Source: Anaeramoeba ignava BMAN (Eukaryota > Protista > Anaeramoebae). From it: a stretch of DNA of 64,000 nt. The notes under the pieces were generated by a model that searched no databases, was not told where the DNA came from, and worked only from the letters and a program-made list of their open reading frames with translations. The position numbers and the translations under genes are program-made. Position 1 is the first letter of the stretch. Each line of letters begins with the position of its first letter. This document shows positions 5,101-60,569 of the stretch, in pieces. The DNA is taken from the NCBI GenBank assembly GCA_028826165.1, contig JAPDFW010000057.1:372001-436000 (forward strand), written 5' to 3'.

Positions 5101-7554
5101 ATGGATGTTTGGAAAATAATCGAACAAGAAAATATTCAAATTGATAATTTAAAAGAAATTGAATTTATTCCACAAAATGAATTAATAAAACAAAATAAAC
5201 CAATTTTACATTTTGCACTTGAAAAAAAAGTTTCAAAAGAAATTATTCAACTTTTAATTGAAAAAGGAGCAAACATAAACTCAATTGATAATTTAAGAAG
5301 AAATTCTTTGCACATTTCAATTATACATAATCCTTCATTAGAAATTATTGAATATTTGATTTCAAAAGGAATTAATATTAAATCAAAAACAAATTATAAG
5401 GAAAATGCTTTACATTTTGCTTGCAAAAATTTAAATCCTTCATTAGAAATTATTGAATACTTGATTTCAAAAGGAATTAATATTAAATCAAAAACAAATT
5501 ATAACGAAAATTCTTTACATTTTGCTTGCAACAATTTAAATCCTTCATTTGAAATTATTAAATATTTAATTTCAAAAGGAATTGATATTAATACAAAAAC
5601 AAATGAAAATAAAACAGCTTTACATTTTGCTTGTCTAAATCCAAAAATATCATTTGAAATTATTGAATATTTAATTTCAAAAGGAATTGATATTAAATCA
5701 AAAACAGATCATAAGGAAAATGCCTTACATTTTGCTTGTCTAAATCTAAATCCTTCATTAGAAATTATTAAATATTTAATTTCAAAAGGAATTAATATTA
5801 AATCAAAAACAAATGAAAATAAAACAGCTTTACATTTTGCCTGTGAAAATTCAAATATTTCATTTGAAATTATTAAATATTTGATTTCAAAAGGAATTAA
5901 TATTAAATCAAAGGCAAATGAAAACAAAACAGCTTTACATTTTGCCTGTGAAAATAATACATCATTAGAAATTATTAAATATTTGATTTCAAAAGGAATT
6001 GATATTAATGCAAAAACAAATTATAATGAAAATGCTTTACATTTTGCTTGCAAAAATCTACATCCTTCATTAGAAATTATTAAATACTTGATTTCAAAAG
6101 GAATTGATATTAATACAAAAACTGATTACGATCAAAATGCTTTGCATCTTGCTTGCGAAAATTTCAATCCTTCATTCGAAATTATTAAATATTTGGTTTC
6201 AAAAGGAATTAATATTCATGAAAAAACAAATGAAAATGAAACCGCTTTACATTTGGTTTGTTTGAATCCGAAATCATCAATCGAAACACTCAAATATTTG
6301 GTTAAGAAGGGTATTAACACTGATCAAAAAACATATGGAAATGAAACTGAATTACATTTTGCTTGCTTAAATGAAAATGAAAAATTTTTATTTGAATCTG
6401 TCAAATTTCTTATTGAAAAAGGGGTTAATATCAATTCACAAACTGAAGAAGATCAAAATCCTTTTCATTATGTTTGCGAAAATGAGGTTGTATCTATTGA
6501 AATTCTCCAATTGTTTATTGAAAAAGGAATAGATATTAATTCAAAAACAAGCACAGATATGACACCTTTACAAATTGCTTGTTCAAAGAGAAATACTTCA
6601 ATCCAAATTATCCAGTATTTGATTGAAAATGGAAGTGATATTAATGCGAAAAATGTGAATAACAAATCAGCCCTTTCAATAGTAATTAATCAAAAAAGAC
6701 AAGATTTAATAGAATTATTATTGATGAACGATGCAGATATTTCCCATTTAACAGAAGATGAAATCACAATTGAATTTGTTGAAAGTTTCTCCAAAGTTTT
6801 TTCAATAAACGAGGATTTACACAAACTATTGAATTCAAATGATAATTTTTCCGATTTAATCATTCAATCAAACGATTCTGAAAAATTCAATGTTCATAAA
6901 TTGATTTTATTAACAAGATTTGATAAAAACGATTCAATTTTATCTAAATTTATCAATATTTGCTCTCAAAAATCAAAAGGAGATGTTCAATTTGCATTAA
7001 ATTTCATTTATACTGGATTTTTTAATTTTCAACAAATTTCTGATAAATTAAATCAAAAAGAGCAAATAAAACAAATTGGAGAAGAAGAAGAAAAAGAAAA
7101 AGAAAAAGAAAAGAAAATTGTTGAAGAATTTTTCAAAGAAATTGGAATTGATTCAAAATGGATTGAATCAAAAAAGGGAAGAAAAGGAATCATCAAAGAT
7201 TTATCAAAATTATATGAAGAAAATGAAACAAAAGATTTTACAATAATAATTTCAAATGAAAATAATGAAGAAGAAAAAGAAATTAAGGTTCATAAATTAA
7301 TATTAATATTAAGAAGTGAATTATATAAAGGAATGTTTCAATTAAATGTTCAAGATACATCAAATCAAGTTCATGATTATTCAAAAAAATCATTTGAAAC
7401 AATTCAAGAATTAATTTATTTTCTTTATCATGATAAATTTGAAGAAACAAAAGAAATTAATTCAAGAATGATTGAAGAATTTGAAGATTTAAAAGATTAT
7501 TATCAATTAAATCAAAACTCAATAATTGATTTAATTTTAAAATCAAAAATTTAA
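5101..7554 (+). CDS. Ankyrin-repeat protein with C-terminal tandem BTB/POZ domains
   Basis: About 14 ankyrin repeats (TALHFAC...EIIKYLISKGIDIN), then BTB motifs FSDLIIQ...VHKLIL and KDFTIII...VHKLILILRSELYKGMF; intronless. Confidence 0.92.
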   Translation: MDVWKIIEQENIQIDNLKEIEFIPQNELIKQNKPILHFALEKKVSKEIIQLLIEKGANINSIDNLRRNSLHISIIHNPSLEIIEYLISKGINIKSKTNYKENALHFACKNLNPSLEIIEYLISKGINIKSKTNYNENSLHFACNNLNPSFEIIKYLISKGIDINTKTNENKTALHFACLNPKISFEIIEYLISKGIDIKSKTDHKENALHFACLNLNPSLEIIKYLISKGINIKSKTNENKTALHFACENSNISFEIIKYLISKGINIKSKANENKTALHFACENNTSLEIIKYLISKGIDINAKTNYNENALHFACKNLHPSLEIIKYLISKGIDINTKTDYDQNALHLACENFNPSFEIIKYLVSKGINIHEKTNENETALHLVCLNPKSSIETLKYLVKKGINTDQKTYGNETELHFACLNENEKFLFESVKFLIEKGVNINSQTEEDQNPFHYVCENEVVSIEILQLFIEKGIDINSKTSTDMTPLQIACSKRNTSIQIIQYLIENGSDINAKNVNNKSALSIVINQKRQDLIELLLMNDADISHLTEDEITIEFVESFSKVFSINEDLHKLLNSNDNFSDLIIQSNDSEKFNVHKLILLTRFDKNDSILSKFINICSQKSKGDVQFALNFIYTGFFNFQQISDKLNQKEQIKQIGEEEEKEKEKEKKIVEEFFKEIGIDSKWIESKKGRKGIIKDLSKLYEENETKDFTIIISNENNEEEKEIKVHKLILILRSELYKGMFQLNVQDTSNQVHDYSKKSFETIQELIYFLYHDKFEETKEINSRMIEEFEDLKDYYQLNQNSIIDLILKSKI

Positions 7555-8362: not shown

Positions 8363-11300
8363 ATGGGAAGAAATAAAAAAACTCAAAGAGTTTCTTCAAA
8401 AAAATCAAGAAAAAAGAATCAAGAAAAAGAATTACAATCAAATCCTTTTAATTTTAGACAAAAAAAACAAAAATTTGAAATTATTGGAACTAAAACAGAA
8501 AAATCACAAAATATTCCACAAAAAAGAGAACAATCATTTAAAATTGTAAAAGAAATAAAAAGAAATAAAAGAAATAAAAAGAAATAAAAGAAAAGAAAAA
8601 AAAAATTTTTTTTAAAAATATTAAAATATTAAATTCAAAATCAAAATCAATTATTCTTTCTAAATTTTAAAAAGAGAGAAGAAACTTTAAGAAAAGAATT
8701 ACAAAATCAAAATAAATCAAATGTTTTTATTGATAAAAGAATTGGTGAAAATGATTCTAAACAAATTGCAAAAGAAGATAAAGTTTTTCTTCGATTTCAA
8801 CAACAAAGAATGAAAAAATTTTCGAAGAAAAATATTTATAATCTTGATGATAATGAAGAAAAAATTCAAAAGAAAAAACCTATTTTAACTCATAATGGAG
8901 TTGATATTATGGAAATTCCTAATTCAATTTTAAATCAAGAAATTGATAAAGAAAAAGAAGATGATGAAAATGTTTATAGTTTTGATGATGAAAGAATTAT
9001 TGATGAATTTCATTTTGGTCGTGGTTCAAATAATCAAAATAAAAAGAAATCAAGAAAAGAAGTTTTACATGAAATTATTTCAAAGAGCAAAATGTATAAA
9101 GTATATATTAAAAAATAAAAATTGAAATTCATTTTAAAATTCATTTTGAAATTAATATTAAAATTAAAATTCATTTTAAAATTAAAATTAAAATTAAAAT
9201 TAAAATTAAAATTCATTTTAAAATTAAAATTCATTTTGAAATTAATATTAAAATTAAAATTAAAATTAAAATTAAAATTAAAATTAAAATTAAAATTAAA
9301 ATTAAAATTAAAATTAAAATTAAAATTAAAAATTAAAATTCATTTTAAAATTCATTTTGAAATTAAAATTAAAATTAAAATTAAAATTAAAATTAAAATT
9401 AAAATTAAAATTAAAATTAAAATTAAAATTAAAATTTAAATCAATATTAAAATTAAAATTAAAATCAATATTAAAATTCATTTTGAAATTAAAATTAAAA
9501 TTAAAATTAAAATTAATATTAAAATCGGATAAAAAATTCATATTGAAATTAATATTAAAATTCATTTTAAAATTCATTTTGAAATTAAAATTAAAATCGG
9601 ATAAAAAATTCATTTTGAAATTAATATTAAAATCGGATAAAAAATTTTGAAAAATTAAGAATCAACACGATCAACAAAAAAAAGAACAAAAAGAAGAAAG
9701 AAAAATGCTTGATAATGAATTTGATGAAATTATTTCACATGGATTTTTGAAACCAAAAAGAAAACATACTTTAGAATCAACAAAAAATTCTCAAAATAAT
9801 GAATTTACTTCATCAATGAATGAATTATTTTTTGAAAAAAGAATTAAACCTTCAAATCGTTCAAAAACAGAAGAAGAAATCACAAAAGAAAAAAAAGAAA
9901 AAATGAAACAAAAAGAAGTAAAATTGATTCAATTCAAATTTAATTTGAAAATAATAATAATAATAATAATAATAAATCATTTTTTTTTTAAATTGAAAAT
10001 CAAATTTAAAGAAAGAAAACCAAAAAAGAATGCTTATGGATCAAGAATTTTCATCAGAAGATGAACAAGAAATGGAAAAACAAAAAAATACTTCTTTGAA
10101 TAAAAAAAAGAAAAATACAAGAATTACAGATGATGATATTTTTGATGATTTTGAATTACTTGAAGAATTTAGACAACATAATTTGAATGAGAATGAAAAT
10201 GGAAATGAAAATGAAAATCTAAGTGAAAATGAATTGGATGAAGAATATCAAGAAAAAGAAGATCTAATCAATGAATTTGATTTGGATCCTGATTTTAATA
10301 TTGAAGAACAATACAAAGAATTTATTTCTATTCTTGAAAAAAAAGGAAAAGAAGAAGAAAAAACCAACTTTATTCAAAAAACTCGAATCAAAATTACAAA
10401 TTCAAATCAAAACAAAAGACTGAAATTACAAAGACTTTATCAGCTTGTGTTTTATCATTTTACTCAACTTTGTGGAGCTTTGAATATTTCAAATGCAAAT
10501 TTGTTAGTAAATGAATTATTTGAAATTACTCAAATTATTCCAAGTTTTGTTGTTTATCATTCAAAACAAGAATTGAAAAAAATACAAGAAAAATTCACTG
10601 AGAGTTTACAACAAAATGTGCAGATATTACTTTCTCAAAATGATTCAAATCATAATGATAACCAAGAAAAGCAAAATATCATCAATTTTCCTGAAATTAT
10701 TGATATTTTTAAATTTAGATTGTTTTCCATTTTATTTCCTGTTACAGATTTTAGACATCCAGTTATCACACCAACTTTACTATTAATTAATGAAATTTTA
10801 ACAAAACGTCCTATTATAACTTTCCAAGATGTTTGCTCAAGTTTATTTTTAGCCTCAATATTTTATTCATGTGTATTTTAACAAAATTTTAAAAACCAAA
10901 AACCAAAAACAAAAAACAAAATTTCTTTTTTTTAAAAAAAATAATCTTTTAATTATGTATTCTTTTCTTTCTATTTTTCGTTCTTTCATTTTTTTATAAT
11001 TGATTTATAATCAAACTTTAAGTATTTGAAACCATCAAAAAGATATAGTCCTGAATTGATATTATTTCTAAAATCACTTCTTAAAACTTCAATTAAAGAA
11101 AATACAAAAAATTCTAATTCTTTTCAATTTAATATTTGTCCTCTTTGGATAAGAAATGATTGGTTATTTTTAAATCAAAAAGAAAAATTGATTCCAGAAA
11201 AACTTAAAATTAATATTTTAGTTGAAAATCAAGAGACAAATCAAAATAAAGTGAATTGTTTATCAATAATTGCTCAAATTTTAGATGAACTTATTGATGA

Positions 11301-11889
11301 TTGGAATTTACATCCTTCTTTTCCCGAAATTTTCACAGAAATTTCACAAATCATTTCCCTTTCAAAATTATCAATTTTAAATGAAAAAAAAAGCAAAAAA
11401 AAGAAAAGCAAAAAAAAGAAAAGTGAAAATTCTTTACAATTTATTTATTCATCTTTATTAAAGAAAATGAACAATCAAATTGAACAAAAATCAATTACAA
11501 GATCTAAATTACAAATTTATAACCGAAAACCTGCAATGATTAAATCTCTAAATCCAAAATTTAATATAACGTAATTAAAAAAAAAAAGTGGAACAAAAAA
11601 AAATTGAGAATTTTAATCAAAAAAAAAATATTTTCTTTTTTTTTCATTTTTAATTAGATTTTCATTATCAAAACCAAAAAGACTTGAAGCTTTGAAAAAA
11701 AAAGTACAAACAGAAACTCGAGGAGCAATTCGAGAATTAAGAAAAGATACAGCATTTTTAGCTTATGAAAAAGAAAAGAATAAACAAATTGAAAAAGAAG
11801 AAAGAAATCAAAAAACGAAAGAAATTTTTTCAGATTTACAACAACAACAACATCAATGGAAACAATTTTTAACTACAAAAAGAAAATAA
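8363..11889 (+). CDS. NOP14: Nucleolar protein 14 (SSU processome)
   Basis: Exons 8363-8545, 8675-9100, 9660-9917, 10012-10872, 11023-11570, 11658-11889, all with in-frame GT-AG joins. Motifs NPF, KSNVFIDKRIGEND, LTHNG, KSRKEVLHEIISKSK, PSNRSKTEEE, FPVTDFRHPVITP, ETRGAIRELRKD. Confidence 0.93.
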
Positions 11890-11985: not shown

Positions 11986-14900
11986 TTAAATTAAATTTTG
12001 TTTTCGATAAAGATAATCTAATTGAGGATAAAATTCATAATCAACTGGAAAATGTATATCTAACCATCCTTCAATTTTAATTGATTTAAAATCAATCATT
12101 AATTCAATTTTTTCTTCTGAATTTGAATTTGAATTTGATTTTGAATTTTTTGAATTTGAATTTGATTTTGAATTTGATTTTGAATTTAATTTTAGATTTG
12201 AATGTGATTTTGGTTTTGATTTTAATTTAATTTGTATTTGTTTTTTTTCTTGAATTGATGATTGTGTTTTTGTTCTTGATCTTGTTGTTAATTTTCTACT
12301 TCTTTTTGGTTTTGAATTAAATTTTTCAATTTCCTTTTCAGAAATTTTTTCATTAACAAATCTAATTTTAATTTTAAATTCAAACAAAATCATTAAATTA
12401 TTAAATTTTTAAATCATTAAATTTTTAAATTTTACTCATCAGTTGAAAAATTAATTAATAATTGCTTTATTATTTTTGAATTAAGATTTGGAAAAGTTGA
12501 TTTATAATTTCGAGAATCTGAACTTTCAAGAAATTTCCGATTTAAAATTAGTAAATTAAGAGATTCTTTGATCATATTTAAATTTGGTCTTTAAAAGGAA
12601 AAGTAAATAATTTTTTAAATTTTGATTTTAATTTTGATTTTGATTTTAATTTTAATTTTAATTTTGATTTTGATTTTTATTTTGATTTTTAATTTTAATT
12701 TTAATTTTAATTTTAATTTTGAATTTGATTTTGATTTTAATTTTAATTTAAATTTTAATTTTGATTTTAATTTTTGATTTTAATTTGATTTTGATTTTAA
12801 ATTTTAATTTTGATTTTAATTTTAATTTTAATTTTAATTTTGATTTTAATAATTACCTTGATTTTTCAAAATGAAAATTTTTAAACCATTGATCTAATTC
12901 TTGAATCATCATTTTACTTTGCAAAGCATTTCCAAAAGTACAAAGATCTTTATTATTCATTAATTCATTTGTTAAAAATTTACTTATTAAATAAGAAATT
13001 TTTTGGAAGAAAGAATGAATCAAAGAAGAAGGAATTTTATGGAATTGAAGAATTGAATAATTTCTATATAAAATTTGAGTAACATCATTTGGAGAGAAAA
13101 ATTCCTGATCAAGAAGTCTTGATTTTGAAGGCATTTCACTTCTTCTTCTTGTGATTGAAAAGGAAATTTCTGGTCCGAAATCAAGAACATGAATTTGTTG
13201 CAGAAAAGCTTTTGATAATAAAGGTTTGATTTCGGAAAAAAAATACTCAACAATGTATTTTGAAGCTGATTGAAAAAATTCCTTGATTTTTGTTAGTAAA
13301 TTTTGGTTCGGTTTTTTGATGTTTTGAGTAATAAATGCTTGAAGATAAATATGATTGTTCAAAATCCAAAGTAAATCATCAATACTGTTTTTTTTCACAC
13401 CCAAAAGAAGTAAAGAAGAATCGGAAAAAAAGGTGAATATTTTCATTTTGGATTTGTTTTCTAATATCTTCTCATGCTGGAAAAATTTGAATATTAAACA
13501 AGCGCTGAGCGGAATATGATTTTGTAAATATATTTTGTCTCCAAAATAAAATAATCTCTCAATTAGCCATCTTGCTTGATATTCAATTTCGTTTTCTGAG
13601 TGTTTTTTTGTGATGATTTTCTTTGGTTTGTTTTCTGATTCTATTCTCGTTGATTTTCCTTGAGGAATAAATATTTTTGCTTTTTTGGGAATCATAAAAG
13701 ATACTCTTTTTTTTGGTTTTGTTTTAATCATCACTTTTTCATCACTTTTCCCATGATTTTCATTGTTTTCATTGTTTTCATTCTTTGTTTGCATGAATTT
13801 TGTTGATAATGCTCTTCTTTTGGGAAATTTTTTAGGACTTTGAATTTTTTCTACATTTATATCATCTTGAGTGATTTGTTTTAAATTTATACTTAAATTT
13901 GGATCTGATTTTGGTGATTTTTTCTCAACCGTTTCTGCTTCTTTAGATTTTGTTAGTTTTTTATTTTTTTCTTCATCCTTTTCTTTTTCTTCATCTTTTT
14001 CTTTATTATTTAATTGATTTTGAAGGAATATTTTTTCTTGATAAGAAATTTCAAGTAAATCACGCAATTCTTGGATTTCATTTTCCAATTTTTCTTTTGA
14101 AGTATTTAAACTTTCCAAATTATTTTTTAATTTTTGGAATTCATTGAAATTGATTGAAATTTTTTCCATTCCAATTTTTTGATTTTCTAATTGATTTTCT
14201 AATTGATTTTCTAAATTATTTTCTAAATTATTTTCTAATTGATTTTCTAATTGATTTTCATTTTCATTTTCTAAATTATTTTCTAAATCATTTTCTAAAT
14301 TATTTTCTAAATGATTTTCATCTTCATTTTCATCTTCATTTTCATATTCAGATTCATATTCAGATTCATCTCCATTAAAAAATAATCGATCTTCAAGTTT
14401 TTTTTTATCAATTAATAAATCTTCAACTGTTTTTGTTAACTTATCATTTTCTTCTTTTAATTCATTTAAAAGATCCAAATTCATATTTGAATTCTAAATT
14501 GAAGAAAAAAAGTTTTAAATTTTAAATAAATAAATTCTTTTTAATTTGATTTGATTTTGATTTTTGTTTACTAATTGTTTTAATTCTTCAATTTGTTTCT
14601 TAAGTTGAATATTTTCAATTTGATAATCAACATTTGTAGAATATTTTTCTAAATTTTTTTTAAGTACAAGATCTTGTTCTTTTAAAAATTCATTTGAATC
14701 AGTTAAATTTTCATCTTTTTCAGATATTTTTCTTTGAAGTGAATTTATTTTTAAATCACGAATACTAATCATTAAATTAAGTGACTATTTTATTAAGAAA
14801 AATTAAATTTGAAATGAATTTAATTTTAATTTGAAAATATTTTGGATTTAATACTTGAATAACTTCTTCTTTTTTTCTAAATAATTTTCGAATTTTATCA

Positions 14901-17226
14901 ATAAAATTATGTTCTTCTTGAAGTTTTGTTTCTAATTCAGAATTACGTTTCATTTGTTGAGAAAATAATTCTTCTAATTCTTTAATTCTTTTTTTTTGTT
15001 CTTCAATAATTTTGTTAAGTTCTTGTGAATTTTTATCTTGAGGAATTGTTTCTGTATATGAAGAGTTTTGATATTCTTTCATAATTTTAATTTTGATTTT
15101 AATTTTAATTTTTGATTTAAATATTTAATTTTGATTTAATTTTAATATTTGATTTAATTTTGATTTGATTTTAATATTTGATTTTATTTTGATTTAAATA
15201 TTTGATTTAAATATTTGATTTAAATTAAATATTGATTTAATTTTGATTTAATTTTGATTTTAATATTGATTTTGATATTGATTTTGATATTGATTTAATT
15301 TTGATTTTGATTTGGATTTAATTTAAAATATTTGATTTAAATATTTGATTTAATTTTGATTTTAATTTAAATATTTGATTTTAATATTTGATTTAATTTT
15401 GATTTTAATTTAAATATTTGATTTAAATATTTGATTTAATTTTGATTTTAATTTAAATATTTGATTTTAATATTTGATTTTAATATTTGATTTCAAAAAA
15501 TATACTCGCAAGTTGTAATCTTAATCTTTTAATTTCTCTTTTTAATTCAGCAACAGATCCAGTTGTAGATTCATTAATCATAGATTTATTCTTAATTTGT
15601 TTAGCTCTTTCAGCAAAAGTAAGAGTAGAATAAGTTTCACCAAAAGATCTTTTTGAAGCAGAAACATTACAAATGATCCAAGTTTTATTATTCCCACCAA
15701 GAGAATCCTTGAGAAAAAAAGTTAACTTTGAATCACGATAAGGAACATGTCTTTTTTTTCCATTACAAACTTCTACAAGAGCAGCAATAACATTACCCAA
15801 AGCAGACAAAGAGCGATTAATCTTACCAGCTTCCTTAAGCCTCACTCCAGTAGTCTTAGTGAGTTTTTGTCTTTCAGAACCGGCAAGATCAACGAGATTT
15901 AATCGCGAAGTTCTTGTGCGAATTATTCCGTTAATTGTCACTTCTTTTCGCTCCAAAACCATCACAAAACAACTGTGTGATCTGGAGCTATCGGGATTAA
16001 GACTTGTGGCGCCAACAACGCGGTTCGCCGAGCCAAGTTCAATAACTTCGAAAATTTGTTCTGGACTTGTTACAATGATTTCTTGCACTCCATCAACATA
16101 TGTTCCTCCTAAAATATCTTCCTTGATTTGTAAATGATGCGAAGTAGGGTTAATCAAATCGGAAATGATTTCGTTGTATATCTGCAAATAATAGCACTTT
16201 AAAACAAAACTCAATTCGGCTTTTTTTGTGTCTTCATTTTGAGAAAATTTTTCTTTTTCGTTTTTAATCAAGGAAAAAATGAATGAAACCATCCTTGGAA
16301 TTAACCCTCTAGACTTCACCATATCGCGGTCTCGAGACAGTAAATCAATCCCAGGCGGTCCTGTCATCGTGTATGTCTTACCCGAGGCGGTTTGTCCATA
16401 CGCGAATATTGTTCCGTGATAACCTTGAACAAATGACTCACAAATTGATTTTCCTGTTTTATTAAATACTTCTTCTTGTGTTGTTTCTGGTCCTCCGATA
16501 AAGTCAAATCTGAAATACTTCGGTGGTGTGCTTGATAATGTTATGCTTCCTCTTTCCTTTTCCATACTCAGACAACTTTCTTCATTGTTGTCTTCTTCCC
16601 CAATTTTTAATGGTCTAATTCTTAAGAAAATTTGAATGTTATTTTTTGTTGATATTTTTGTTGGTGTTTTTTCTTTTGGTTCATTTGATTCTTTTTCTGT
16701 GATTATTTCTTCTACTTTTGGAGATCTTATATACATTTTTTTTAATATTTTTAATTTTAATTTTGATTTTAATTTTGAATTTTAATATTAATTTTAATTT
16801 TAATTTTAATTTTGATTTTAATTTTAATTTTAATTTTAATTTTGAATTTTAATATTGATTTTAATTTTGAATTTTAATTTTAATTTTAATTTTAATTTTA
16901 ATTTTAATTTTGATTTTGATTTTGATTTTAATTTTAATTTTAATTTTGATTTTAATTTTAATTTCAATTTTAATTTGAATTTTAAATTTAATTTTGATTT
17001 TAATTTTAATTTTAATTTTAATTTCAATTTTAATTTTAATTTTAATTTTAATTTTAATTTTGATTTTAATTTTAATTTTAAATTTAATATTGATTTTAAT
17101 TTTTAATTTCAAAATGAATTTTAAATTTAATTTTAATTTTAATATTGATTTTGAATTTAATTTTAATTTTGATTACGCAAGATTTGGCATCGTTAATCCT
17201 CTTTTCATTTTTCTTAGATGAGTCAT
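11986..17226 (-). CDS. Kinesin motor (kinesin-12/KIF15-like) + coiled coil + C-terminal Dilute (DIL) domain, ~1289 aa
   Basis: Exons 17226-17177, 16725-15506, 15075-14855, 14784-14572, 14493-12857, 12588-12436, 12361-11986. All six introns are GT-AG and phase-compatible; total 3870 nt. Motor motifs: GQTASGKT, SSRSH, DLAGSE, HVPYRDSKLT. DIL-like: FFQKISYLISKFLTNELM...LCTFGNALQSKMMIQELDQWF...FPNLNSKIIKQLLINFSTDEF. Confidence 0.88.
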
Positions 17227-25709: not shown

Positions 25710-27481
25710 ATGAATGATTGTTTATTTTTTGGTTTAAATAAATACTCAAAACTTATCAAAAATAAACCAGAAAAATAACAAAACCAATTCAATTTAAATT
25801 TGAAAATGAAAATGAAAATGAAAATGAAAAACAAATTAAACAAATTTCATCAGGTGATTTTGTAACAATTTTCCTTTTTGAAAATGGAAAAGCAATAAGA
25901 TATTTAAGTGAAAAAGATTCAAATCAAAATCCTGAAAAAATCCAAATTGAAAATATTCAAAAAGTAACTGTTGATTATCTAAATGAAGCTATTTTAACAA
26001 TAGAAGGAAATGTATTTGCAAAAGGAAATGATATTAATCCAAATAATCCAAATAAATTTATCAATATTTCATCATTAATTGAAGATACAAATGATAGAAT
26101 AATTCAAGATATTGTTTCTGGAGCTAAATCAATTTACTTATTAACTTCAAATCAAAATGCTTATGGAATTGGTTCAAATCATTATGGCCAATTTGGTTTT
26201 GATTCTGAAACACTTGAAAAAATAGAAAAACCAATTTTAATGATGAAAAATGTTTCTAAAATATTTTCAGGAAATTCTTCAAATTGTGTTTTTCTTTTAA
26301 ATTCAAATCAAGAATTATTTGGATCTGGTGATAATTATCAAGGTCAACTTGGATTAGGAGAATCAAGAAAAGAAGAAGATAAAATCCAAAAATTAACCAA
26401 AATCCAAAATATTCCAAAAGGTAAAATAATTGATATTCAATGTGGATTTTGGTATTCAATAATGTTGATTGAAAATGAAAATCAAAATCCAAAAAGAAAA
26501 CTTTATTCATGTGGAAATTTTCGATATAATGGACTTGGCAAAAATGAAAATACTTATGAATTTACTGAAATCAAATCATCTTTATTTGATAATGATTATG
26601 ATATTCTTGATTTTTCTTGTGGAAATGTTCATACTTTGATTTTAACTTCCAAAGGGAAATTTATAGTATTTGGATATAATTATTCTGGTCAATTAGGAAC
26701 TGGAGATACAAATGATCAATTAACTCCAATTCAAATTGAACTTCCTAAATTAAGATTTAATGAAAATATTTCCAATTATCATGTTTATTGTGGATTTAAC
26801 AAAACATTTATTTATTATTCTCCTCCTTCTTTTTCCAATCTTGAAGAAGATTTGATAAAATTATTTAGAAGAAAAGAATTTTGTGATATTTCATTTAAAA
26901 CAGAAAATGGAGAAATAATTGAAGCTCATAAATTAATATTGAAATATAGATTAAAAGATCAAAATCAAGATGAAATTGAAAAACTTCAAGAAATTATTTC
27001 AAATAAATCAATTAAAGAATCAAATCAAATATTTGAAATGATTTATTCAAACAGAATAACAAATCCAAAATTATATTCTGAAATTAAAGAAATTATAAAT
27101 TCAAATGAAAAAATTGAAGAAACAATGAAAAGAATTTATTTAAATGAAAATGAAAATGAAAAAGATTTTATAATTGAAAGAAAAGAAAAACAATATAAAT
27201 TTCCAAAATTAATATTAATAATGAGAAGTGAATTATATCGAGGAATGTTTTTATCTGTAACTGAAGATAAATCAAATAAAGTTACAGATTATAGTGAATT
27301 AAGTAATAAATCATTTCAAATATTTGAATATTGGATTTATTTAAATCAAATTAAAGAAGAAATTGAAATTACACAAGAAATCATTAATGAAATTCAAACT
27401 GGAATTGATTATTTTCAATTAAATCAAACAAATCCAAATTTATTTGATTTATTAATTAATAAATTTAATAATCAAAATTAA
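25710..27481 (+). CDS. RCC1-repeat + tandem BTB protein (copy 1); one -1 homopolymer frameshift near 25775
   Basis: ATG at 25710 gives MNDCLFFG, identical to the paralog at 48494; adding one A to CCAGAAAAATAACA restores PEKITKPIQFKF and opens the frame to 27481. Confidence 0.85.
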
Positions 27482-27489
27482 TAAAGAAA

Positions 27490-28470
27490 ATAAGAATAGA
27501 TTTAATATTTAATTTATAAATTAATTTAAAAATATAATTTAATATTTAATTTTATTACTAAAATATTAATTTATTGTTTTAGATTTAAATATTTTCTTAT
27601 TTAAATATTTAACATATAAATATAAAAAATGGAAATAAATTTAATTTAATATTTAATTTATAAATTAATTTAAAAATATAATTTAATAATTAATTTTATT
27701 ATTAAAATATTAATTTATTGTTTTAGATTTAAATATTTTCTTATTTAAATATTTAACATATAAATATAAAAATGGAAATAAATTTAATTTAATATTTAAT
27801 TTATAAATTAATTTAAAAAATATAATTTAATAATTAATTTTATTATTAAAATATTAATTTATTGTTTTAGATTTAAATATTTTATTATTTAAATATTTAA
27901 CATATAAATATAAAAATGAGAATAGGTTTAATTTAATATTTAATTTATAAATTAATTTAAAAATATAATTTAATATTTAATTTTTATTAAAAATAATAAT
28001 TTAATGTTTTAGATTTAAATATTTTATTATTTAATTATTAAACATATAAATATAAAAATAAGAATAAATTTAATTTAATATTTAATTTGGAAATTAATTT
28101 AAAAATATAATTTAATATTTAATTTTGTGTTTAAAATAATAATTTAATGTTTTAGATTTAAATATTTTTTATTATTTAAATATTTAACATATAAATATAA
28201 AAATAAGAATAGATTTAATTTAATATTTAATTTGGAAATTAATTTAAAAATATAATTTAATATTTAATTTTATTATTAAAATAATAATTTAATGTTTTAG
28301 ATTTAAATATTTTATTATTTAAATATTAAACATATAAATATAAAAATAAGAATAGATTTAATTTAATATTTAATTTATAAATTAATTTAAAAATATAATT
28401 TAATATTTAATTTTATTATTAAAATAATAATTTATTGTTTTAGATTTAAATATTTTATTATTTAAAAATA
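27490..28470. repeat. Tandem satellite, ~144-bp unit, ~6.5 copies
   Basis: Anchor AACATATAAATATAAAAA at ~27611, 27755, 27899, 28041, 28186, 28329. Confidence 0.9.
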
Positions 28471-28873
28471 TTTTGAAAATTGATTTTTTTGAAATTAAAA
28501 TTTTATCTTTTTTTTTGAATTAAATTGAATTAATATTAATTTGGAAATTTGTTTTTAAATTTAAATTTATTAATAATTTTTAAATTCCAAAAAAAAAAAT
28601 TAAATTAAAAATTAAATTAAAATAATTTTCTTTTTTTTTTAATAATAAAAATTAATAAAAAATAATAATAATTTATTAATAAATTAATTTAAAATAATAA
28701 ATTAAAAAGAAAATTAAATTAATTATTAATTTAAATTTATTCTCATTTTTTATATTTTTATTTATTTTCAAAATCCACTTTTTTTATTCATTTTTTTTTT
28801 TAAATTTTTTTTTCATTTTTTTTCCTTTTTTTTTAAAACAAACAAAAACAAACAACAAAAACACAAAAACAAA

Positions 28874-30706
28874 ATGGATAACAATAATAATAATAACCAA
28901 ATTGAAAATGCAAATCAAAATCAAAATGAAAATGAAATGAAAAATTTAGAAAAAAAAGTAACAAAAAATTTAATTAAAGATTATTCAAACCTTTTAAATG
29001 AAAATTCATTTAAAGATTTTTCAATTTTTGTTGAGAATAAATCAAATCCTTTTGAAATTAAAGTTCATAAATCAATTTTATCTTCAAGATCTCCTTTTTT
29101 TAATGAATCATTAAGGCAAGAATCTCTTTCTATTTCTTTAAATCAATTTAATAAAAAAGAAATGGAATCAATTTTGAGTTATATTTATTATGGAAATATT
29201 TCTTTTGAGAATCAAGAAAATCTTATTCAATTATTAGAAATTTCAATTTATTTTAAATTAAATTTATTGAAAGAAATTATTCAAAAAAAAATTTCAAATT
29301 CAATTAATTATTCAAATTTTTTCCAATTTTTATTCCAAAATCGAAATTTAAATTCAAATGAAATTGAAATAAAATGTTTTGAATTAATAAATCAAAATTT
29401 TTCCCAAATTCAAAATAATGAGAATTTATTCAATTTAACTAAAGAAGAAATTATCAAATTTATTCAATTTAAACAAGAAAAAAAAGAAATTTTTCAATTT
29501 GATTTTTTTCAATTTTTAAATCATTGGATTGAAAAAAGAATTAATTCATTAAAAGGAAAGAAATATGAAAACAAAATGAATGCAAAGAAAAGATTATTTC
29601 ATTCTTTTTTTTCATTATTTGATAAAGATTCAATTTCAAAACAAGATTTTGATAAATTAAAACAATTTGATTTTTTTCCTAAATCTATTTTCATCAAGAA
29701 GCAAAAAAAATTAATTCAAGATAATCAAAAAGAAATTGAAGAGAAATGGAAGAAAGAAGTTGAGAATAAAGAGAAGGAAAATCAACAAATGAAAATCGAA
29801 ATTGAAGAGAAATGGAAGAAAGAAGTTGAGAATAAAAAAAAAGAAATTGAAGAGAAATGGAAGAAAGAAATTGAAAAGAAAAACAAAGAAGTTGAAGAGA
29901 AATGGAAGAAAGAAATTGAGAATAAAAAAAAAGAAAATCAACAAATGAAAATTGAAATTGAAGAGAAATGGAAGAAAGAAATTAAAAAGAAAGATAAAAT
30001 TCTGAAACAAAAAGAGAAGGAAATTCAAAATCTTAAATTATCATTTGAAAAAGAAAAACAAAAACAAAATAAAAATCAAAAAGAAATTCAAAAAGAAATT
30101 CAAAAAGAAAATCAAAATCAAAAACAAAAACAAAATAAAAATCAAAATCAAAAGAAATTGTTGAAGATTTTTTCCAAGTCAAGAATTGTGAAAGATATTG
30201 AATATGTTAAGAAATTACAAGAATGGATAAATGATAATAATTTTTTTTCTAAAATGAAAAAAGGATTTCCAGCAAAAAAAGATGGATTTAATTCTCAAAA
30301 TTGGCATAAAGCAGTTGATGGGAAAGGAAAAATATTAATTATTATCAAAACAAAAGATAATTTTATTTTTGGAGGTTTTACTCAAGTTGGATTTAATGGA
30401 AATACAGGAGACATTTATGATTCAAATGCATTTATTTTTTCATTAAGAAATGATAAAGGAGATAGAATATCTGCAAAGTTTACAATTAAAACACCTCAAA
30501 GTGCAATTTATTCTAATTTAAATTATGGTCCATATTTTGGAAATGATTTTCGTTTATCTTCTAATTTACAATCTGGTTGGTCAGATTTTGGTAATAGTTA
30601 TAATCTACCTAATGGAATTACTTATGGAACAAATGAAGCTAGAAGTTATTTAGCTGGTTCTTATAATAAATGGGTTGTTGATGAACTTGAAACTTATTTC
30701 ATTTAA
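28874..30706 (+). CDS. BTB + coiled-coil + TLDc protein
   Basis: FKDFSIFV...VHKSILSSRSPFF (BTB), EIEEKWKKE repeats, TLDc motifs DGFNSQNWH, NFIFGGFT, AFIFSL, YGPYFG, VVDELETYF. Confidence 0.9.
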   Translation: MDNNNNNNQIENANQNQNENEMKNLEKKVTKNLIKDYSNLLNENSFKDFSIFVENKSNPFEIKVHKSILSSRSPFFNESLRQESLSISLNQFNKKEMESILSYIYYGNISFENQENLIQLLEISIYFKLNLLKEIIQKKISNSINYSNFFQFLFQNRNLNSNEIEIKCFELINQNFSQIQNNENLFNLTKEEIIKFIQFKQEKKEIFQFDFFQFLNHWIEKRINSLKGKKYENKMNAKKRLFHSFFSLFDKDSISKQDFDKLKQFDFFPKSIFIKKQKKLIQDNQKEIEEKWKKEVENKEKENQQMKIEIEEKWKKEVENKKKEIEEKWKKEIEKKNKEVEEKWKKEIENKKKENQQMKIEIEEKWKKEIKKKDKILKQKEKEIQNLKLSFEKEKQKQNKNQKEIQKEIQKENQNQKQKQNKNQNQKKLLKIFSKSRIVKDIEYVKKLQEWINDNNFFSKMKKGFPAKKDGFNSQNWHKAVDGKGKILIIIKTKDNFIFGGFTQVGFNGNTGDIYDSNAFIFSLRNDKGDRISAKFTIKTPQSAIYSNLNYGPYFGNDFRLSSNLQSGWSDFGNSYNLPNGITYGTNEARSYLAGSYNKWVVDELETYFI

Positions 30707-38563: not shown

Positions 38564-41500
38564 TCAAACTCTTTTTTTAATGTTTTCAATTAAATATCTT
38601 GATTCATCAATTAAAATTTCATTTAAAGGACATAAACCAATTATAATCAATTTTTTGGTGAATTTTCCAGCAAAAAAATCATTTTTAATTTGCATTTTAA
38701 AAAGAAATTTTTGGAAATAAAATTTTTGGAAATATTTCTGAATTTCTAATTGAGAATAATTAAGAACAGATTCTCTGAATTCGGAAGCAGTTTGATTAAA
38801 AAGAACCTGAGCAGTTTCATTAAAAATAACACACCAACGAGTATCAGAGCAATCATGAACAGCGGCGGTTAGCATAAATCTATAACTACATTTTGAATAA
38901 ATTTGGTTGCATTTGGGACAATACCATTTCCCTTCTTTTTTAATTGCTTTCTTATTGCAATTCTTATTGATACAAGATGGATATATAATCCTTTCCAAAT
39001 TTGTGTTGATTATATGTGTTATAACTCCAGAAATTATAAATGTTTCTGATTCCGTTATTTTCCCTAATTTATGATCCCTAATTTCAGATAGTAGCAATCT
39101 TTTATGATCAAACCAATCATAATCCACTCCTGAAATTGGTTCTTTTCCGTTTTGATTATTATTGTATTCCTTCCAAAATTCAATTAGATTTTGTGTTTCT
39201 TGACAATTCGGATTCCAAAATATTTGCGATATTTCGTTGATGTTAATATATTTTCCATTAAAATCTCCAATCATTGCTCCTTTTATTGCAATAATATTTA
39301 GAATATCATTTTGTTCATTTTTTTGAATAAATTCTTCAATTTTCTCTGCTGCTGTACTCCATAGTCTAATCTCAATTTTGGATGTTTGATCGATAATTAG
39401 TCCTTTTCTTTTTATGACTTCTTTTCCATCCTTTGTGGCTATTCTTTCCAAATCACCCAAATCAAATAGAATACCAATAGAATCAAATAATGAAAATCTA
39501 TTTAATTTTTTGATTTCTGAGATTTGAATAAAATTGAATTGGATGTTTGGAATTGAACCATCATCTCCACATTTTTCAACTATTGTTTGGGTTGTAAACG
39601 AAATTTCAAAAAGAATATTTGAATTTATTAACAAAGGATTTGATTTCATAAACTTCCCATTTTTGATATAATAAACAGATCCAATTTGAAGAACTGGATA
39701 AAATTTATCAATCATTTCATTAAACATTATTGCTTTTATTTCAGATTTTTCTTGATCAAGCAAAGTTATTGAAAATATTCTTCCTGATCTTGCTAAATTA
39801 TTTGAATAATTTTGAATATCTGTTTTCATGGTAACTCTTGCTTTGATTAGAAATTTTGTTTCAATAGGATTAATACTTTTAAAAGGTAATATTTTTAATT
39901 TTTTGAATCTGTTTAAATTTCTATTTCGTTTTTGCTTATAGAAACGGTTGTAGTGAGGAATATAAGTGCTGATACTATTCTTAGAAGCACTTTGTTGATA
40001 TTTTAAAAGATTGATTTTTTTTCCTTGACTATTTCCATTGGAGTTATCTTTTCCGTTTTGATTATTATTGTATTCCTTCCAAAATTCAATTAGATTTTGT
40101 GTTTCTTGGCAATTCGGATTCCAAAATATTTGTGATATTTCGTTGATGTTAATATATTTTCCATTAAAATCTCCAATCATCGCTTCTTTTATTGCAATAA
40201 TATTTAGAATATCATTTTGTTCATTTTTTTGAATAAATTCTTCAATTTTCTCTGCTGCTGTACTCCATAGTCTAATCTCAATTTTGGATGTTTGATCGAT
40301 AATTAGTCCTTTTCTTTTTATGATTTTTTTTCCATCTCTTGTTTCTATTCTTTCCAAATCACCCAAATCAATTAGAATACCAATAGAATCAAATAGTGAA
40401 AATCTATTTAATTTTTTGATTTCTGAGATTTGAATAAATTTGAATTGGATGTTTGGAATTGAACCATCATCTCCACATTTTTCAACTATTGTTTGGGGTT
40501 TAAATACGATTTCAAAAGGTATTTTGGGTTTTTGCGAGTATATTTTTGTTTTCAAATCCAAGTTTTTGATATAATAAACAGAACCAATTTGAAGAACTGG
40601 ATCAAATTTATCAATCATTTCATTAAACATTATTGCTTTTATTTCAGATTTTTCTTGATCAAGCAGAGTTATTGATCTCATTTTTTTTATGTTTTCTGTA
40701 TTAGTTGTGTAATATTGAATATCTTTCTTCATGATCACTCTTGTTTTGGTGATGAAATTTTGGTTGAAAATACTAAGATTTCTAAAAAGTGTAAAATGAG
40801 AAAATGGGTCTATTTTTGGTTGTTTTTCTTTTTCTTTTTCTTTTTCTTGATTTAATTGTTGATGTCTCCATTTAATTAAGATAGTTAAATTGTTTTGGTT
40901 TTCATCATCTTTTTCTGAAAAATTCAAAGATCTCACAGCTGAATGTCTGTTGTAATTTCTATGTTGATATCTTAAGTAATTTGATTTTGGTTTTTGACTG
41001 AAAAAAAAGTATGGATTTTGATTTTGATTTAAATTTATATTTTGATTTTGATTGATATTTGGATTTTGATTTAAATTGATATTTGGATTTTGATTTAAAT
41101 TTATATTTGGATTTTGATTTAAATTTATATTTGGATTTTGATTTAAATTTATATTTGGATTTTGATTTAAATTGATATTTGGGTTTAAATTGATATTTGG
41201 ATTTGGATTTAAACTTAAATTTGGATTTTTATTTGGACTTTGATTTAAATTGATATTTGGATTTATATTTTGATTTAAATTGATATTTGGATTATTTTGG
41301 CTTGAAAATAAATTATTTGGATTTATATTTTGATTTAAATTTGGGTTTTGATTTAAATTGATATTTGGATTTAAATTGATATTTGGATTTATATTTGGAT
41401 TTAAATTGATATTTGGATTTTTATTTGGACTTAAGAATAAATTATTTGGATTTTGATTTAAATTTAAATTTGGACTTGAAAATAAATTATTTGGGTTTGG

Positions 41501-43316
41501 ATTTAAATTTGGATTTTTATTTGGACTTAAGAATAAATTATTTGGGTTTTGATTTAAATTGATATTTGGATTTTGATTTAAATTTATATTTGGATTTTGA
41601 TTTAAATTTATATTTGGATTTTGATTTAAATTTATATTTGGATTTTGATTTAAATTGATATTTGGGTTTAAATTGATATTTGGATTTGGATTTAAGTTTA
41701 AATTTGGATTTGAAAATAAATTATTTGGATTTGGATTTAAATTGATATTTGGATTTTTATTTTGATTTAAATTTATATTTGGATTATTTTGGCTTGAGAA
41801 TAAATTATTTGGATTTTGATTTAAATTGATATTTGGACTTTTATTTGGACTTAAGAATAAATTATTTGGATTTTGATTTAAATTTATATTTGGATTTATA
41901 TTTTGATTTAAATTGATATTTGGGTTTTGATTTAAATTTATATTTGGATTTTTATTTGGACTTAAGAATAAATTATTTGGGTTTGGATTTAAATTGATAT
42001 TTGGGTTTTGATTTAAATTTAAATTTGGATTTTTATTTGGACTTAAAAATAAATTATTTGGATTTGGATTTAAATTTAAATTTGGATTTAAATTTGGATT
42101 TGAAAATAAATTATTTGGATTTTGATTTAAATTGATATTTGGATTTTTATTTGGACTTAAGAATAAATTATTTGGATTTTGATTTAAATTTAAATTTGGG
42201 TTTTGATTTAAATTGATATTTGGATTTAAATTGATATTTGGATTTAAATTGATATTTGGATTTGGATTTAAATTGATATTTTGACTTGAAAATAAATTAT
42301 TTGGATTTATATTTTGATTTAAATTGATATTTTGATTTATATTTTGATTTAAATTTAAATTTGGGTTTTGATTTAAATTGATATTTGGATTTAAATTGAT
42401 ATTTGGGTTTTGATTTAAATTTAAATTTGGATTTGAAAATAAATTATTTGGATTTGGATTTAAATTGATATTTGGATTTATATTTTGATTTAAATTGATA
42501 TTTGGGTTTTGATTTAAATTGATATTTGGATTTTTATTTGGACTTAAGAATAAATTATTTGGGTTTTGATTTAAATTTGTATTTGGGTTTTGATTTAAAT
42601 TTGTATTTGGGTTTGGATTTAAATTGATATTTGGACTTTTATTTGGACTTGAGAATAAATTATTTGGGTTTTGATTGCGATTTAAATTTGTATCTGAACT
42701 TGAGATCGATAATGAATTTGGGCTTGAAAATAAATTAATTGGAGTTGATAATAAATTTGGATTTAAATTCAATAATAATTTTGATTTTTCATTTTCATTT
42801 TGATTTTGATTTTCATTTTGATTTTGATTTTCATTTTGATTTTGATTTTCATTTTGATTTTGATTTTGATTTTGATTTTCATTTTGATTTTCATTTTGAT
42901 TTTCATTTTGATTTTCATTTTGATTTTCATTTTCATTTTCATTTTGATTTTCATTTTGATTTTCATTTTCATTTTCATTTTGATTTTGGAGTTTATCATA
43001 ATCTAAAATTTCCATAAATCTAAATACAAAAGAAAAAGAAAAAGCAAAAGTTTGATTTAGTTTTTTATTTTGAATTGAAATTTGTTTAAAATTTAATTTT
43101 AAACTTATACTCTTTTGATTTATCATAATAAATCCTTATTTTTTCACCTTCTAAAACATTTTTTAAAAAAATATTTTGAATTTCTTCTGAAACTAAAGCA
43201 TCAGTTATTGCATCATCTTCTTGAACATTAATTATAAGTCCAAAATTAGAAATAAAACGAAAATTTGAAACAAAACATATTGATTCAAGAATTAAATTTG
43301 AAAAATCCAAATTCAT
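38564..43316 (-). CDS. RPA1: Replication protein A 70-kDa subunit-like, with duplicated DBD-A/B and a long N/P-rich linker
   Basis: Exon 1 43316-43111, intron 43110-43020, exon 2 43019-38564. Two copies of [59 protein letters not shown]; DBD-C zinc finger [24 protein letters not shown]. Confidence 0.88.
41010..42990 (-). repeat. Coding low-complexity repeat (NINLNQNP / NNLFLSPNK / NQNE)
   Basis: Uninterrupted in-frame tandem repeats within the RPA70-like ORF. Confidence 0.9.
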
Positions 43317-48046: not shown

Positions 48047-48059
48047 TCAAAATCAATAA

Positions 48060-48395
48060 AAAAAATGAGAATTGATTTAATATTTAATTTATAAATTAAT
48101 TTAAAAATTTAATTTATTATTTAATTTTATGTTTAAAATAATAATTTAATGTTTTAAATTTAAATATTTTATTATTTAAATATTTAACATATAAATATAA
48201 AAAATGGAAATAGATTTAATTTAATATTTAATTTATAATTTAATTTAAAAATATAATTTAATATTTAATTCCATGTTTAAAATAATAATTTAATTTTTTA
48301 GATTTAAATATTTTATTATTTAAATATTTAACATATAAATATAAAAAATAAGAATAGATTTAATTTAATATTTAATTTATAAATTAATTTAAAAT
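48060..48395. repeat. Short array (~2.3 copies) of the same ~144-bp unit as 27490-28470
   Basis: Shares TATTTAACATATAAATATAAAAA..GATTTAATTTAATATTTAATTTATAAATTAATTTAAAA. Confidence 0.8.
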
Positions 48396-48493
48396 TAAAA
48401 TCAAAATTAAAATTAAAATTAAAATTAAAATTTAAATTAAAAAAGTTCCAAAAATACTTTTTTCATTTTTTTCATTTTTTTCTTTTTTCAAAA

Positions 48494-60015: not shown

Positions 60016-60109
60016 TTCAAAAAAAAAATGAAGAGAAAAAAATGAAAAAAAATTAAATTTAAAAAAAGGAAAAAAGGAAAAAAATTTAAAAAAGGAAAAA
60101 AGGAAAAAA

Positions 60110-60450: not shown

Positions 60451-60569
60451 AAAAATAAAAATTGAAATTTGAATTAATTCAATAAAAAAAGGAATTAAGA
60501 AAAATTGAGCTTTTATTGAATCATTTTAAATTTTTTCATCATTATAAAAAAAAAATTTTTTTCGTTCAT

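What the first reader, a model, noticed from the sequence alone, without database searches (positions are those of the whole stretch)
11986..17226. Chimeric motor: kinesin head joined to a myosin-V/XI-type Dilute (DIL) cargo-binding tail
Seen: five separate ORFs in the track plus two unlisted exons splice into one 1289-aa frame through six phase-compatible GT-AG introns, with no intervening promoter-sized spacer. Known: the C-terminal ~350 aa carry hallmarks of the myosin V/XI globular tail (upstream P-x-x-A-C-L-I-F-K and W-I-L-N-N; DIL core F-x-K-I-x-Y-L-I...N-E-L-M...C-T-F-G-N-A...I-Q-E-L-D-Q-W; later F-P-N-L-N...L-L-I-N-F-S-T-D-E-F..I-S). DIL normally sits on actin motors or on afadin/RADIL-type adaptors. 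I do not recall it on a kinesin. Inference: a microtubule motor using a myosin-type Rab/cargo receptor, possibly moving myosin-V-like organelle transport onto microtubules.
Basis: partly seen in the sequence, partly recalled or inferred. Interest (0 to 1): 0.85.

Follow-up and report, generated by a model that had tools for sequence, protein, structure and literature searches.

The report
Kinesin-12 motor with myosin-V-type cargo tail
In the anaerobic amoeba Anaeramoeba ignava, whose genome shows no myosin V, a spliced gene and two related copies join a microtubule motor to the cargo-gripping tail fold known from the actin motors myosin V and XI, a pairing I found in no kinesin survey, which suggests this cell hauls such cargo along microtubules.

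Summary
Seven minus-strand exons give 1289 aa through six GT-AG introns. Exon 2 is an intact kinesin motor of the KIF15/kinesin-12 group. Exons 5-6 hold a Pfam DIL domain, and the exon-5 tail folds like the myosin V/XI globular tail (Z 17.6). RNA contigs confirm introns 2 and 5 exactly. Introns 3 and 4 rest on homology and paralog gene structure. Exon 1 is doubtful (alternative start 16736, 1276 aa). The organism is Anaeramoeba ignava. Two diverged paralogs share the architecture and intron positions; one is a pseudokinesin. The scan noted both on other contigs. The tail groups with, and shares two introns with, about 22 motor-less NT-C2-DIL genes of this genome, not with myosin V. All five myosin tails I could read are class I. 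The myosin-V Rab11-binding Tyr/Gln are not kept, so the cargo partner is unknown. No kinesin-DIL appears among 1624 surveyed kinesins or in the papers searched; MyTH4-FERM kinesin-14 is the precedent. Presence in other species could not be tested. Verdict: real, lineage-specific new motor architecture; function inferred.

The parts
17177..17226 (-). Predicted exon 1 (16 codons); doubtful
   Evidence: GT donor and 34% GC island. Not covered in the RNA lay-on, probably masked; the RNA contig reads 10 nt through the intron-1 acceptor. My models of the two paralogs have no such exon.
16726..17176 (-). Predicted intron 1 (451 nt), or 5' UTR/upstream DNA if ATG 16736 is the start
15506..16725 (-). 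Exon 2: complete kinesin-12/KIF15-type motor (Pfam Kinesin at 15594-16622), neck linker and neck coil; P-loop, switch I, switch II and L12 intact
   Evidence: covered by spliced contig record 6
15076..15505 (-). Intron 2, phase 1, same position in all three paralogs
   Evidence: Exact splice in RNA contig
14855..15075 (-). Exon 3: coiled-coil stalk, kinesin-12 stalk profile positions 55-102
   Evidence: 15.4 bits; reversed controls up to 7.7; matches exon 2 of the C2 paralog (0/500 shuffles); partly in RNA record 6
14785..14854 (-). Intron 3, 70 nt, phase 0
   Evidence: Not seen in RNA; the kinesin-12 stalk profile runs on across it (102 then 104); phase-0 intron at the same place in the paralogs
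14572..14784 (-). Exon 4: kinesin-12 stalk segment, profile positions 104-169
   Evidence: 19.9 bits; aligns to KIF15 residues about 470-540 (z 6-7)
14494..14571 (-). Intron 4, 78 nt, phase 0; the one link between motor half and tail half not shown by RNA or by a profile
   Evidence: GT-AG and phase; same intron and flanking exon homology in C2; a split here would leave 30 nt between stop 14515 and ATG 14484
12857..14493 (-). Exon 5: coiled coil, acidic E/N low-complexity and basic linker, then the globular tail (from about 13596); Pfam DIL first half at 12868-13011
   Evidence: covered by RNA records 2-5
12589..12856 (-). Intron 5, phase 2, inside DIL; shared with NT-C2-DIL genes
   Evidence: Exact splice in RNA contig
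12436..12588 (-). Exon 6: second half of DIL (profile 58-104)
12362..12435 (-). Intron 6, 74 nt, phase 2, just after DIL; shared with NT-C2-DIL genes
   Evidence: RNA record 1 ends at 12361
11986..12361 (-). Exon 7: end of the tail with an S/N/K low-complexity insert; stop at 11986-11988
   Evidence: RNA record 1; homology to the last exon of C72 is weak (7/500 shuffles)

Best explanation
One expressed gene encodes an N-terminal kinesin-12 (KIF15-type) motor, its own kinesin-12 neck and stalk, a further coiled coil and linker, and a C-terminal myosin-V/XI-type globular tail (DIL). Shown: gene structure (introns 2 and 5 by RNA, 3 by profile continuity, 4 and 6 by paralogs), intact ATPase motifs, tail fold, three paralogs from one motor lineage, and a tail related to this genome's NT-C2-DIL family. 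Inferred origin: a kinesin-12 gene captured the 3' part of an NT-C2-DIL gene once, so that the motor replaced the membrane-binding NT-C2 end; the fusion then triplicated and one copy lost its catalytic motifs. Inferred mechanism: the protein dimerises through the coiled coil and walks to microtubule plus ends, as animal kinesin-12 does, that is away from the acentriolar centrosome. The tail docks on membrane organelles through peptide adaptors or Anaeramoeba-specific small GTPases, using a surface that differs from the myosin-V Rab11 site. It would do on microtubules the kind of organelle hauling and positioning that myosin V/XI does on actin. The cargo is unknown; endosomal, symbiosome or hydrogenosome membranes are candidates.
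For: Splicing. Domains. Fold: pLDDT 85, pTM 0.79; Foldseek and VIA top hits are all myosin V/XI cargo-binding domains (Z 17.6, rmsd 2.9 over 217 residues). Motor: best hits KIF15/KIN-12 at about 50% identity; the three motors form one clade (SH-aLRT 99) inside the KIF15/KIN-12 group (99); motifs intact in the window and C72 copies. Paralogs at C72 and C2 give 1273 and 1264 aa models with the same intron positions and phases. In C72 a kinesin-12 stalk motif and the DIL lie in one uninterrupted 651-codon frame. Of 26 DIL-tail loci, 19 have a Pfam NT-C2 upstream, 3 a weak one, 1 none, and the 3 with a kinesin have no NT-C2. Myosins: six head loci, five tails read, all with TH1 and none with DIL. 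Context: microtubules radiate from a centrosome beneath the symbiont-hydrogenosome mass, and Rabs are greatly expanded (PMC11550330). Plant class II kinesin-12 is reported to carry cell-plate material (bioRxiv 10.1101/2024.08.20.608524, title and abstract start only).
Against: No localisation, motility or binding data. The myosin-V Rab11 residues are not kept (Tyr to Met, Gln to Ile; Y1714E abolishes Rab11a binding in Myo5b, PMC7496772), although other motor-less DIL proteins lack them too. Animal kinesin-12 is mainly a spindle motor (PMC6747500 abstract). Intron 4 is not covered by RNA. The three tails are not resolved as one clade in the free trees (monophyly not rejected, p=0.67). Tail identity to myosin V is only 14-19%, and the fold also belongs to the CATCHR tethers (Munc13 MUN Z 14, Sec6 Z 13.4).
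Confidence: 0.55

Rival explanations
1. One gene, but a division-specific linker: the kinesin-12 keeps its ancestral spindle or cytokinetic role, and the DIL tail tethers organelles (symbiosome, hydrogenosomes) or the cortex to microtubules at division, as yeast Myo2 does for organelle inheritance on actin (own knowledge).
For: The motor and stalk are kinesin-12, and these three are the only clearly placed kinesin-12 motors in the genome (C64 and C71 are long, partial rows). Symbionts segregate in an organised way at division (PMC11550330). The fold is shared with tethering complexes.
Against: Contig depth in a bulk run (19-30) cannot tell timing, so there is no direct evidence either way. Three diverged copies, one of them catalytically dead, suggest more than a single mitotic task.
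Confidence: 0.27
2. One gene, but the DIL tail is not a cargo receptor: it serves for autoinhibition or for hetero-assembly with the many NT-C2-DIL proteins or the pseudokinesin copy, which supply the membrane contact.
For: The Rab11-site residues are lost. A large motor-less DIL family and a pseudokinesin-DIL exist side by side. Myosin V tails fold back on their heads (7yv9), and yeast Myo2 tail binds the kinesin-like Smy1 (6ixq).
Against: The whole globular tail, including the part before the Pfam DIL core, is kept in three copies that are only 21-31% identical. No interaction data.
Confidence: 0.12
3. Two adjacent genes: a short kinesin-12 ending in or after exon 4 and a separate motor-less DIL protein starting in exon 5.
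For: No listed RNA contig spans introns 3 or 4. Exon 5 has its own ATG at 14484, and motor-less DIL genes are common in this genome.
Against: Only 30 nt would separate the stop from the next ATG. The DIL half has no NT-C2, unlike 22 of the 23 other DIL loci. The same order and intron pattern occur at two other loci, and in C72 the kinesin-12 stalk motif shares an exon with the DIL.
Confidence: 0.06

Closest known systems
Kinesin-12 (animal KIF15/Xklp2, plant KIN-12/POK)
   Same: N-terminal motor about 50% identical, same clade, family-typical switch II and neck sequence, homologous first 170 residues of stalk.
   Different: The long coiled-coil tail is replaced by a DIL globular tail; none of 237 kinesin hits (76 of 900 aa or more) matched a DIL-tail profile.
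Myosin V / myosin XI (MYO5A-C, yeast Myo2/Myo4, plant XI-K)
   Same: Motor - coiled coil - globular tail layout; the tail has the same fold (Z 16-17.6) and the Pfam DIL core.
   Different: The motor is a kinesin; no convincing IQ lever; tail identity 11-19%; Rab11-binding Tyr/Gln absent; the tail does not group with a myosin-V tail (AU p=0.01).
NT-C2 - coiled coil - DIL proteins (about 22 in A. ignava; also A. flamelloides and an environmental sequence)
   Same: Closest tail sequences, same tree clade, and the same two phase-2 introns in DIL.
   Different: The NT-C2 end is replaced by a kinesin motor and kinesin-12 stalk.
KCBP/ZWICHEL (kinesin-14 with MyTH4-FERM)
   Same: A kinesin carrying a tail module otherwise typical of myosins; listed in the supplements of PMC2867816.
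   Different: Different tail module, C-terminal motor of the kinesin-14 family, different lineages.
Afadin/RADIL and fungal ankyrin-DIL proteins
   Same: DIL outside a myosin (ankyrin-DIL seen; afadin/RADIL from own knowledge).
   Different: No motor domain; a separate branch of the tail tree (ankyrin-DIL).

Membership tests
Kinesin superfamily | Complete motor domain with P-loop, switch I, switch II and L12 | tested here: met
   Pfam Kinesin 1-327/327, 344 bits; motifs aligned
Kinesin superfamily | Microtubule-stimulated ATPase and motility | not testable with these tools
   Needs a bench assay
Kinesin-12 (KIF15/KIN-12) | Motor groups with KIF15/KIN-12 in a tree | tested here: met
   SH-aLRT 99 in a quick IQ-TREE mixture tree; references covered kinesin-2, -3, -4 and -12 only; database-wide best hits agree
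Kinesin-12 (KIF15/KIN-12) | N-terminal motor followed by the family's neck and stalk | tested here: met
   (15-20 bits, above reversed and NT-C2-DIL controls)
Kinesin-12 (KIF15/KIN-12) | Long coiled-coil C-terminus without a DIL domain | tested here: not met
   DIL globular tail present; absent from 237 relatives. Filed as a chimeric variant, not a typical member.
DIL / myosin V-XI globular tail fold | Pfam DIL above the curated cut-off | tested here: met
   28.7 bits (cut-off 24) in exon 5 alone; the rest in exon 6
DIL / myosin V-XI globular tail fold | Two-lobed helical cargo-binding fold | tested here: met
   Exon-5 part only (260 aa): Z 17.6 to MyoVc and 17.5 to MyoXI-K; the parts in exons 6-7 were not folded
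Myosin V/XI | Myosin motor domain and IQ lever arm | tested here: not met
   No Myosin_head at this locus; no credible IQ motif
Myosin V/XI | Rab11/Ypt31-binding Tyr and Gln on lobe II | tested here: not met
   Tyr to Met and Gln to Ile by alignment to MyoVa and a myosin-V tail; residue identity read from sequence alignment, not from a complex model
Myosin V/XI | Cargo, adaptor or GTPase binding by the tail | not testable with these tools
   Needs pull-down or localisation
Anaeramoeba NT-C2-DIL family | N-terminal NT-C2 domain | tested here: not met
   No NT-C2 hit at the three kinesin loci
Anaeramoeba NT-C2-DIL family | Tail sequence and intron positions of the family | tested here: met
   whether myosin V/XI genes share these introns was not tested

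The most novel reading that the evidence does not exclude
Anaeramoeba, which shows no myosin V/XI, built a small family of microtubule motors (two active, one pseudo-motor) with myosin-V-type tails from an expanded NT-C2-DIL tether family, and uses them to position or segregate the symbiosome and hydrogenosomes along centrosomal microtubules. That would be a switch of a cargo-receptor system from actin to microtubules tied to a symbiotic organelle.
Probability: 0.2. Interest if true: 0.88.

Novelty: new variant of a known kind. Interest (0 to 1): 0.68.

Why it matters
Motor heads and cargo tails are usually track-specific, and the DIL globular tail is the hallmark of actin-based myosin V/XI, which one classification places in the last eukaryotic common ancestor (PMC3942036). 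A natural kinesin with this tail would be a second case, after KCBP, of a myosin-type tail on a kinesin. It is a ready-made test of how portable the tail is between tracks. It gives named candidates for the motors that arrange the Anaeramoeba symbiosome, for which the papers I read mention no motor. It also shows that a metamonad kept class-I myosins and expanded motor-less DIL proteins, whereas Trichomonas and Giardia are reported to have no myosin.

Tried and rejected
1) The joined 1289-aa model was built only inside scripts to check phases. It was sent to no search or folding tool; every search and the fold were done exon by exon, by reference, so the full tail (exons 5-7) and the full protein were not folded or searched. 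2) Orthologs in A. flamelloides or elsewhere: a motor search limited to 223-710 aa, a motor alignment reaching longer proteins, a tail alignment (it did not even recover its own member P0001) and two metagenome scans found none. These searches are insensitive, and records of this genome are hidden, so they say nothing about absence. 3) The HMMER search of cluster representatives returned no kinesin-DIL protein, but also missed the C72 paralog that should have scored, so this blank is uninformative too. 4) Direct descent of the tail from a myosin V was rejected by the AU test, with only two myosin-V-like references and possible composition bias; the mixture model gave the same split. 5) Pfam found no stalk family in exons 3-4; a custom profile was needed. 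6) The kinesin-12 NP..EN..L motif is exact only in C72, not in the window's exon 4. 7) A one-base insertion in an A run at 15751 in the RNA contig would break the conserved L12 motif; I take it as a contig error, since the genomic frame is continuous. 8) Short 'joints' with 20-23 letter sides come from repeats and were ignored. 9) Two papers I wanted (the C2-domain classification and the Myo5b-Rab11 structure) are not held.
Full report
Observation. The window is AT-rich eukaryotic DNA. The finding lies on the minus strand. Rebuilding the model gave seven exons (17226-17177, 16725-15506, 15075-14855, 14784-14572, 14493-12857, 12588-12436, 12361-11986), six GT-AG introns and 1289 aa, exactly as stated. 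Pfam finds a complete kinesin motor in exon 2 and a DIL domain split in order over exons 5 and 6.

Organism. Contig lengths of this assembly (844100, 382398, 774986) equal those on record for Anaeramoeba ignava proteins, and those proteins map exactly on the fetched loci. The genome is A. ignava, an anaerobic metamonad amoeba with a symbiosome (PMC11550330).

Is it one transcript? One public run holds the stretch. Its contigs are spliced. One contig joins the motor exon to exon 3 across intron 2, which removes the possibility that transcripts all stop after the motor. Another joins exons 5 and 6 across intron 5. A third ends at the intron-6 acceptor. Introns 3 and 4 are not shown. For intron 3, a profile built from 48 kinesin-12 stalks matches exon 3 at positions 55-102 and exon 4 at 104-169, so the homology runs straight across the junction; reversed exons and twelve DIL proteins score lower. 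For intron 4, a split would leave 30 nt between a stop and the next ATG, and the paralogs below have the same arrangement. Exon 1 is the weak point: the contig matches the genome 10 nt beyond the intron-1 acceptor, and exon 1 was probably masked. A start at ATG 16736 would give 1276 aa.

A family of three. Genome-wide searches show a kinesin followed on the same strand by a DIL at two more loci, C72 and C2. My models are 1273 and 1264 aa. They share the phase-1 intron after the neck, a phase-0 intron after a stalk exon of about 70 codons, and both phase-2 introns of the DIL. Window exons 3, 4 and the start of 5 match C2 exons 2, 3 and 4 in order (0, 4 and 1 of 500 shuffles). In C72 the exon that carries the DIL begins with a kinesin-12 stalk motif; it ties for the best score among 2327 windows and is absent from twelve DIL controls (modest, 11.8 against 8.5 bits). 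This is evidence for the fusion that needs no splice prediction. The three motors are 38-56% identical and form one clade (SH-aLRT 99) inside the KIF15/KIN-12 group. The window and C72 motors have intact catalytic motifs; the C2 motor has altered P-loop and switch motifs and is a probable pseudokinesin. The scan's earlier notes flagged both paralogs and the pseudo-motor; I tested these points myself and do not count the notes as support.

The tail. The exon-5 part matches MyoVa globular tails by sequence (E 1e-5). AlphaFold2 gives a confident helical model (pLDDT 85) whose best structural matches are the cargo-binding domains of myosin Vc, XI-K, Vb, Va and Myo2 (Z 16-17.6), then CATCHR-type tethers such as Munc13 MUN and Sec6 (Z 13-14). 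Its closest sequences, however, are Anaeramoeba NT-C2-DIL proteins. The genome has at least 26 DIL-tail loci: 19 with a Pfam NT-C2 upstream, 3 with a weak one, 1 with none found, and 3 with a kinesin instead. All Anaeramoeba tails fall on one side of the tree (98/83 with LG+G, 100 with the mixture model). Forcing the kinesin tails with a myosin-V tail is rejected (p=0.01); forcing them together is not (p=0.67). Five annotated motor-less DIL genes carry the same two phase-2 introns at the same codons. The simplest history is one fusion of a kinesin-12 5' half to the 3' half of an NT-C2-DIL gene, followed by duplication. Limits: few myosin references, biased composition, and myosin intron positions not checked.

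Myosins. Six myosin-head loci were found. Five tails could be read and all have TH1, one also SH3; the sixth runs off its contig and repeats peptides of another. None has a DIL within the fetched flanks. Counts are lower bounds, but no DIL locus sits behind a myosin head. So there is no sign of myosin V/XI, which is inferred for the eukaryotic ancestor in PMC3942036 (disputed in PMC5583752).

How it probably works. Established knowledge: animal kinesin-12 moves to plus ends and acts in spindles (PMC6747500); one plant class is reported to carry cell-plate material; myosin V/XI tails bind adaptors and Rabs. In Anaeramoeba, microtubules radiate from an acentriolar centrosome under the symbiont-hydrogenosome mass, and Rab families are expanded. 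I infer a dimeric plus-end motor that moves or positions membrane organelles through its tail (0.55). The Tyr and Gln that myosin V uses for Rab11 are replaced, so the partner is probably different. Rivals: a division-specific organelle tether (0.27), a tail used for autoinhibition or assembly with other DIL proteins (0.12), and two genes (0.06).

Known or new. The supplements of the 45-genome kinesin survey (1624 proteins, 105 architectures, Trichomonas and Giardia included) contain no DIL; MyTH4-FERM is the myosin-type tail listed. Paper searches found no kinesin-DIL, and the Anaeramoeba papers do not mention it. None of 237 kinesin relatives has the tail. I could not run an InterPro architecture query; automated records of these A. 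ignava proteins may well list both domains, and searches for orthologs in other species were too insensitive to count. Verdict: a real, lineage-specific domain combination of two known parts, with one precedent of the same kind (KCBP); new variant of a known kind; interest 0.68.

Noticed in passing
L037:5080-6220 (G000:C2:124080-125220, minus): The C2 kinesin-DIL paralog has altered P-loop, switch I and switch II motifs: a probable pseudokinesin carrying a DIL tail.
   Followed up: partly
G000, 22 loci: Large expansion of motor-less NT-C2 - coiled coil - DIL genes, also present in A. flamelloides; several are mis-named 'myosin-7', 'golgin' or 'anillin' in NCBI. The layout recalls C2 + CATCHR tethers. 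Not mentioned in the Anaeramoeba papers read.
   Followed up: partly
G000:C117, C93, C56, C61, C81, C91 (L021-L035, L045-L050): A metamonad with class-I myosins (TH1, one with SH3), although metamonads are described as having lost all myosins (PMC3942036). C117/C93 and C61/C91 are near-identical pairs, possibly assembly duplicates.
   Followed up: partly
L038:5222-8425 and L039:1020-3413: Two kinesins (C93, C27) have in-frame inserts of about 280-340 aa near the P-loop, consistent with inteins; a kinesin intein host is reported in PMC10710043.
   Followed up: no
G000 kinesin set: About ten kinesins; none grouped with the kinesin-3 references, the usual vesicle motors, but several rows are long or partial and kinesin-1 was not in the tree.
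   Followed up: partly
L054:6271-7691 (G000:C104:402271-403691): A DIL tail gene with no NT-C2, kinesin or myosin found upstream; possibly DIL-only.
   Followed up: no
L052 (G000:C24), protein P0016: The annotated protein starts at the DIL tail and runs on into about 440 unrelated residues, while a long coiled-coil frame and a weak NT-C2 lie upstream; the public gene model is probably wrong.
   Followed up: no
window 38564-43126 (minus): 1520-codon RPA1-like frame with about 700 residues of N/P/L/Q repeat at the front and an internally duplicated OB-fold segment (around residues 900 and 1200).
   Followed up: no
window 57764-62279 (minus): Two dynamin-family genes in tandem.
   Followed up: no
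window 5101-7554, 26240-30706, 46328-50239 (plus): Several BTB-domain genes (ankyrin-BTB, RCC1-BTB three times, BTB-TLDc).
   Followed up: no
window 10030-11889 (plus): Nop14-like gene converging on the kinesin gene, with about 100 nt between the stops.
   Followed up: no
window 15751: The RNA contig has one extra base in an A run, plus single-letter differences at 14171 and 16572; probably a contig error and strain or allele differences.
   Followed up: no
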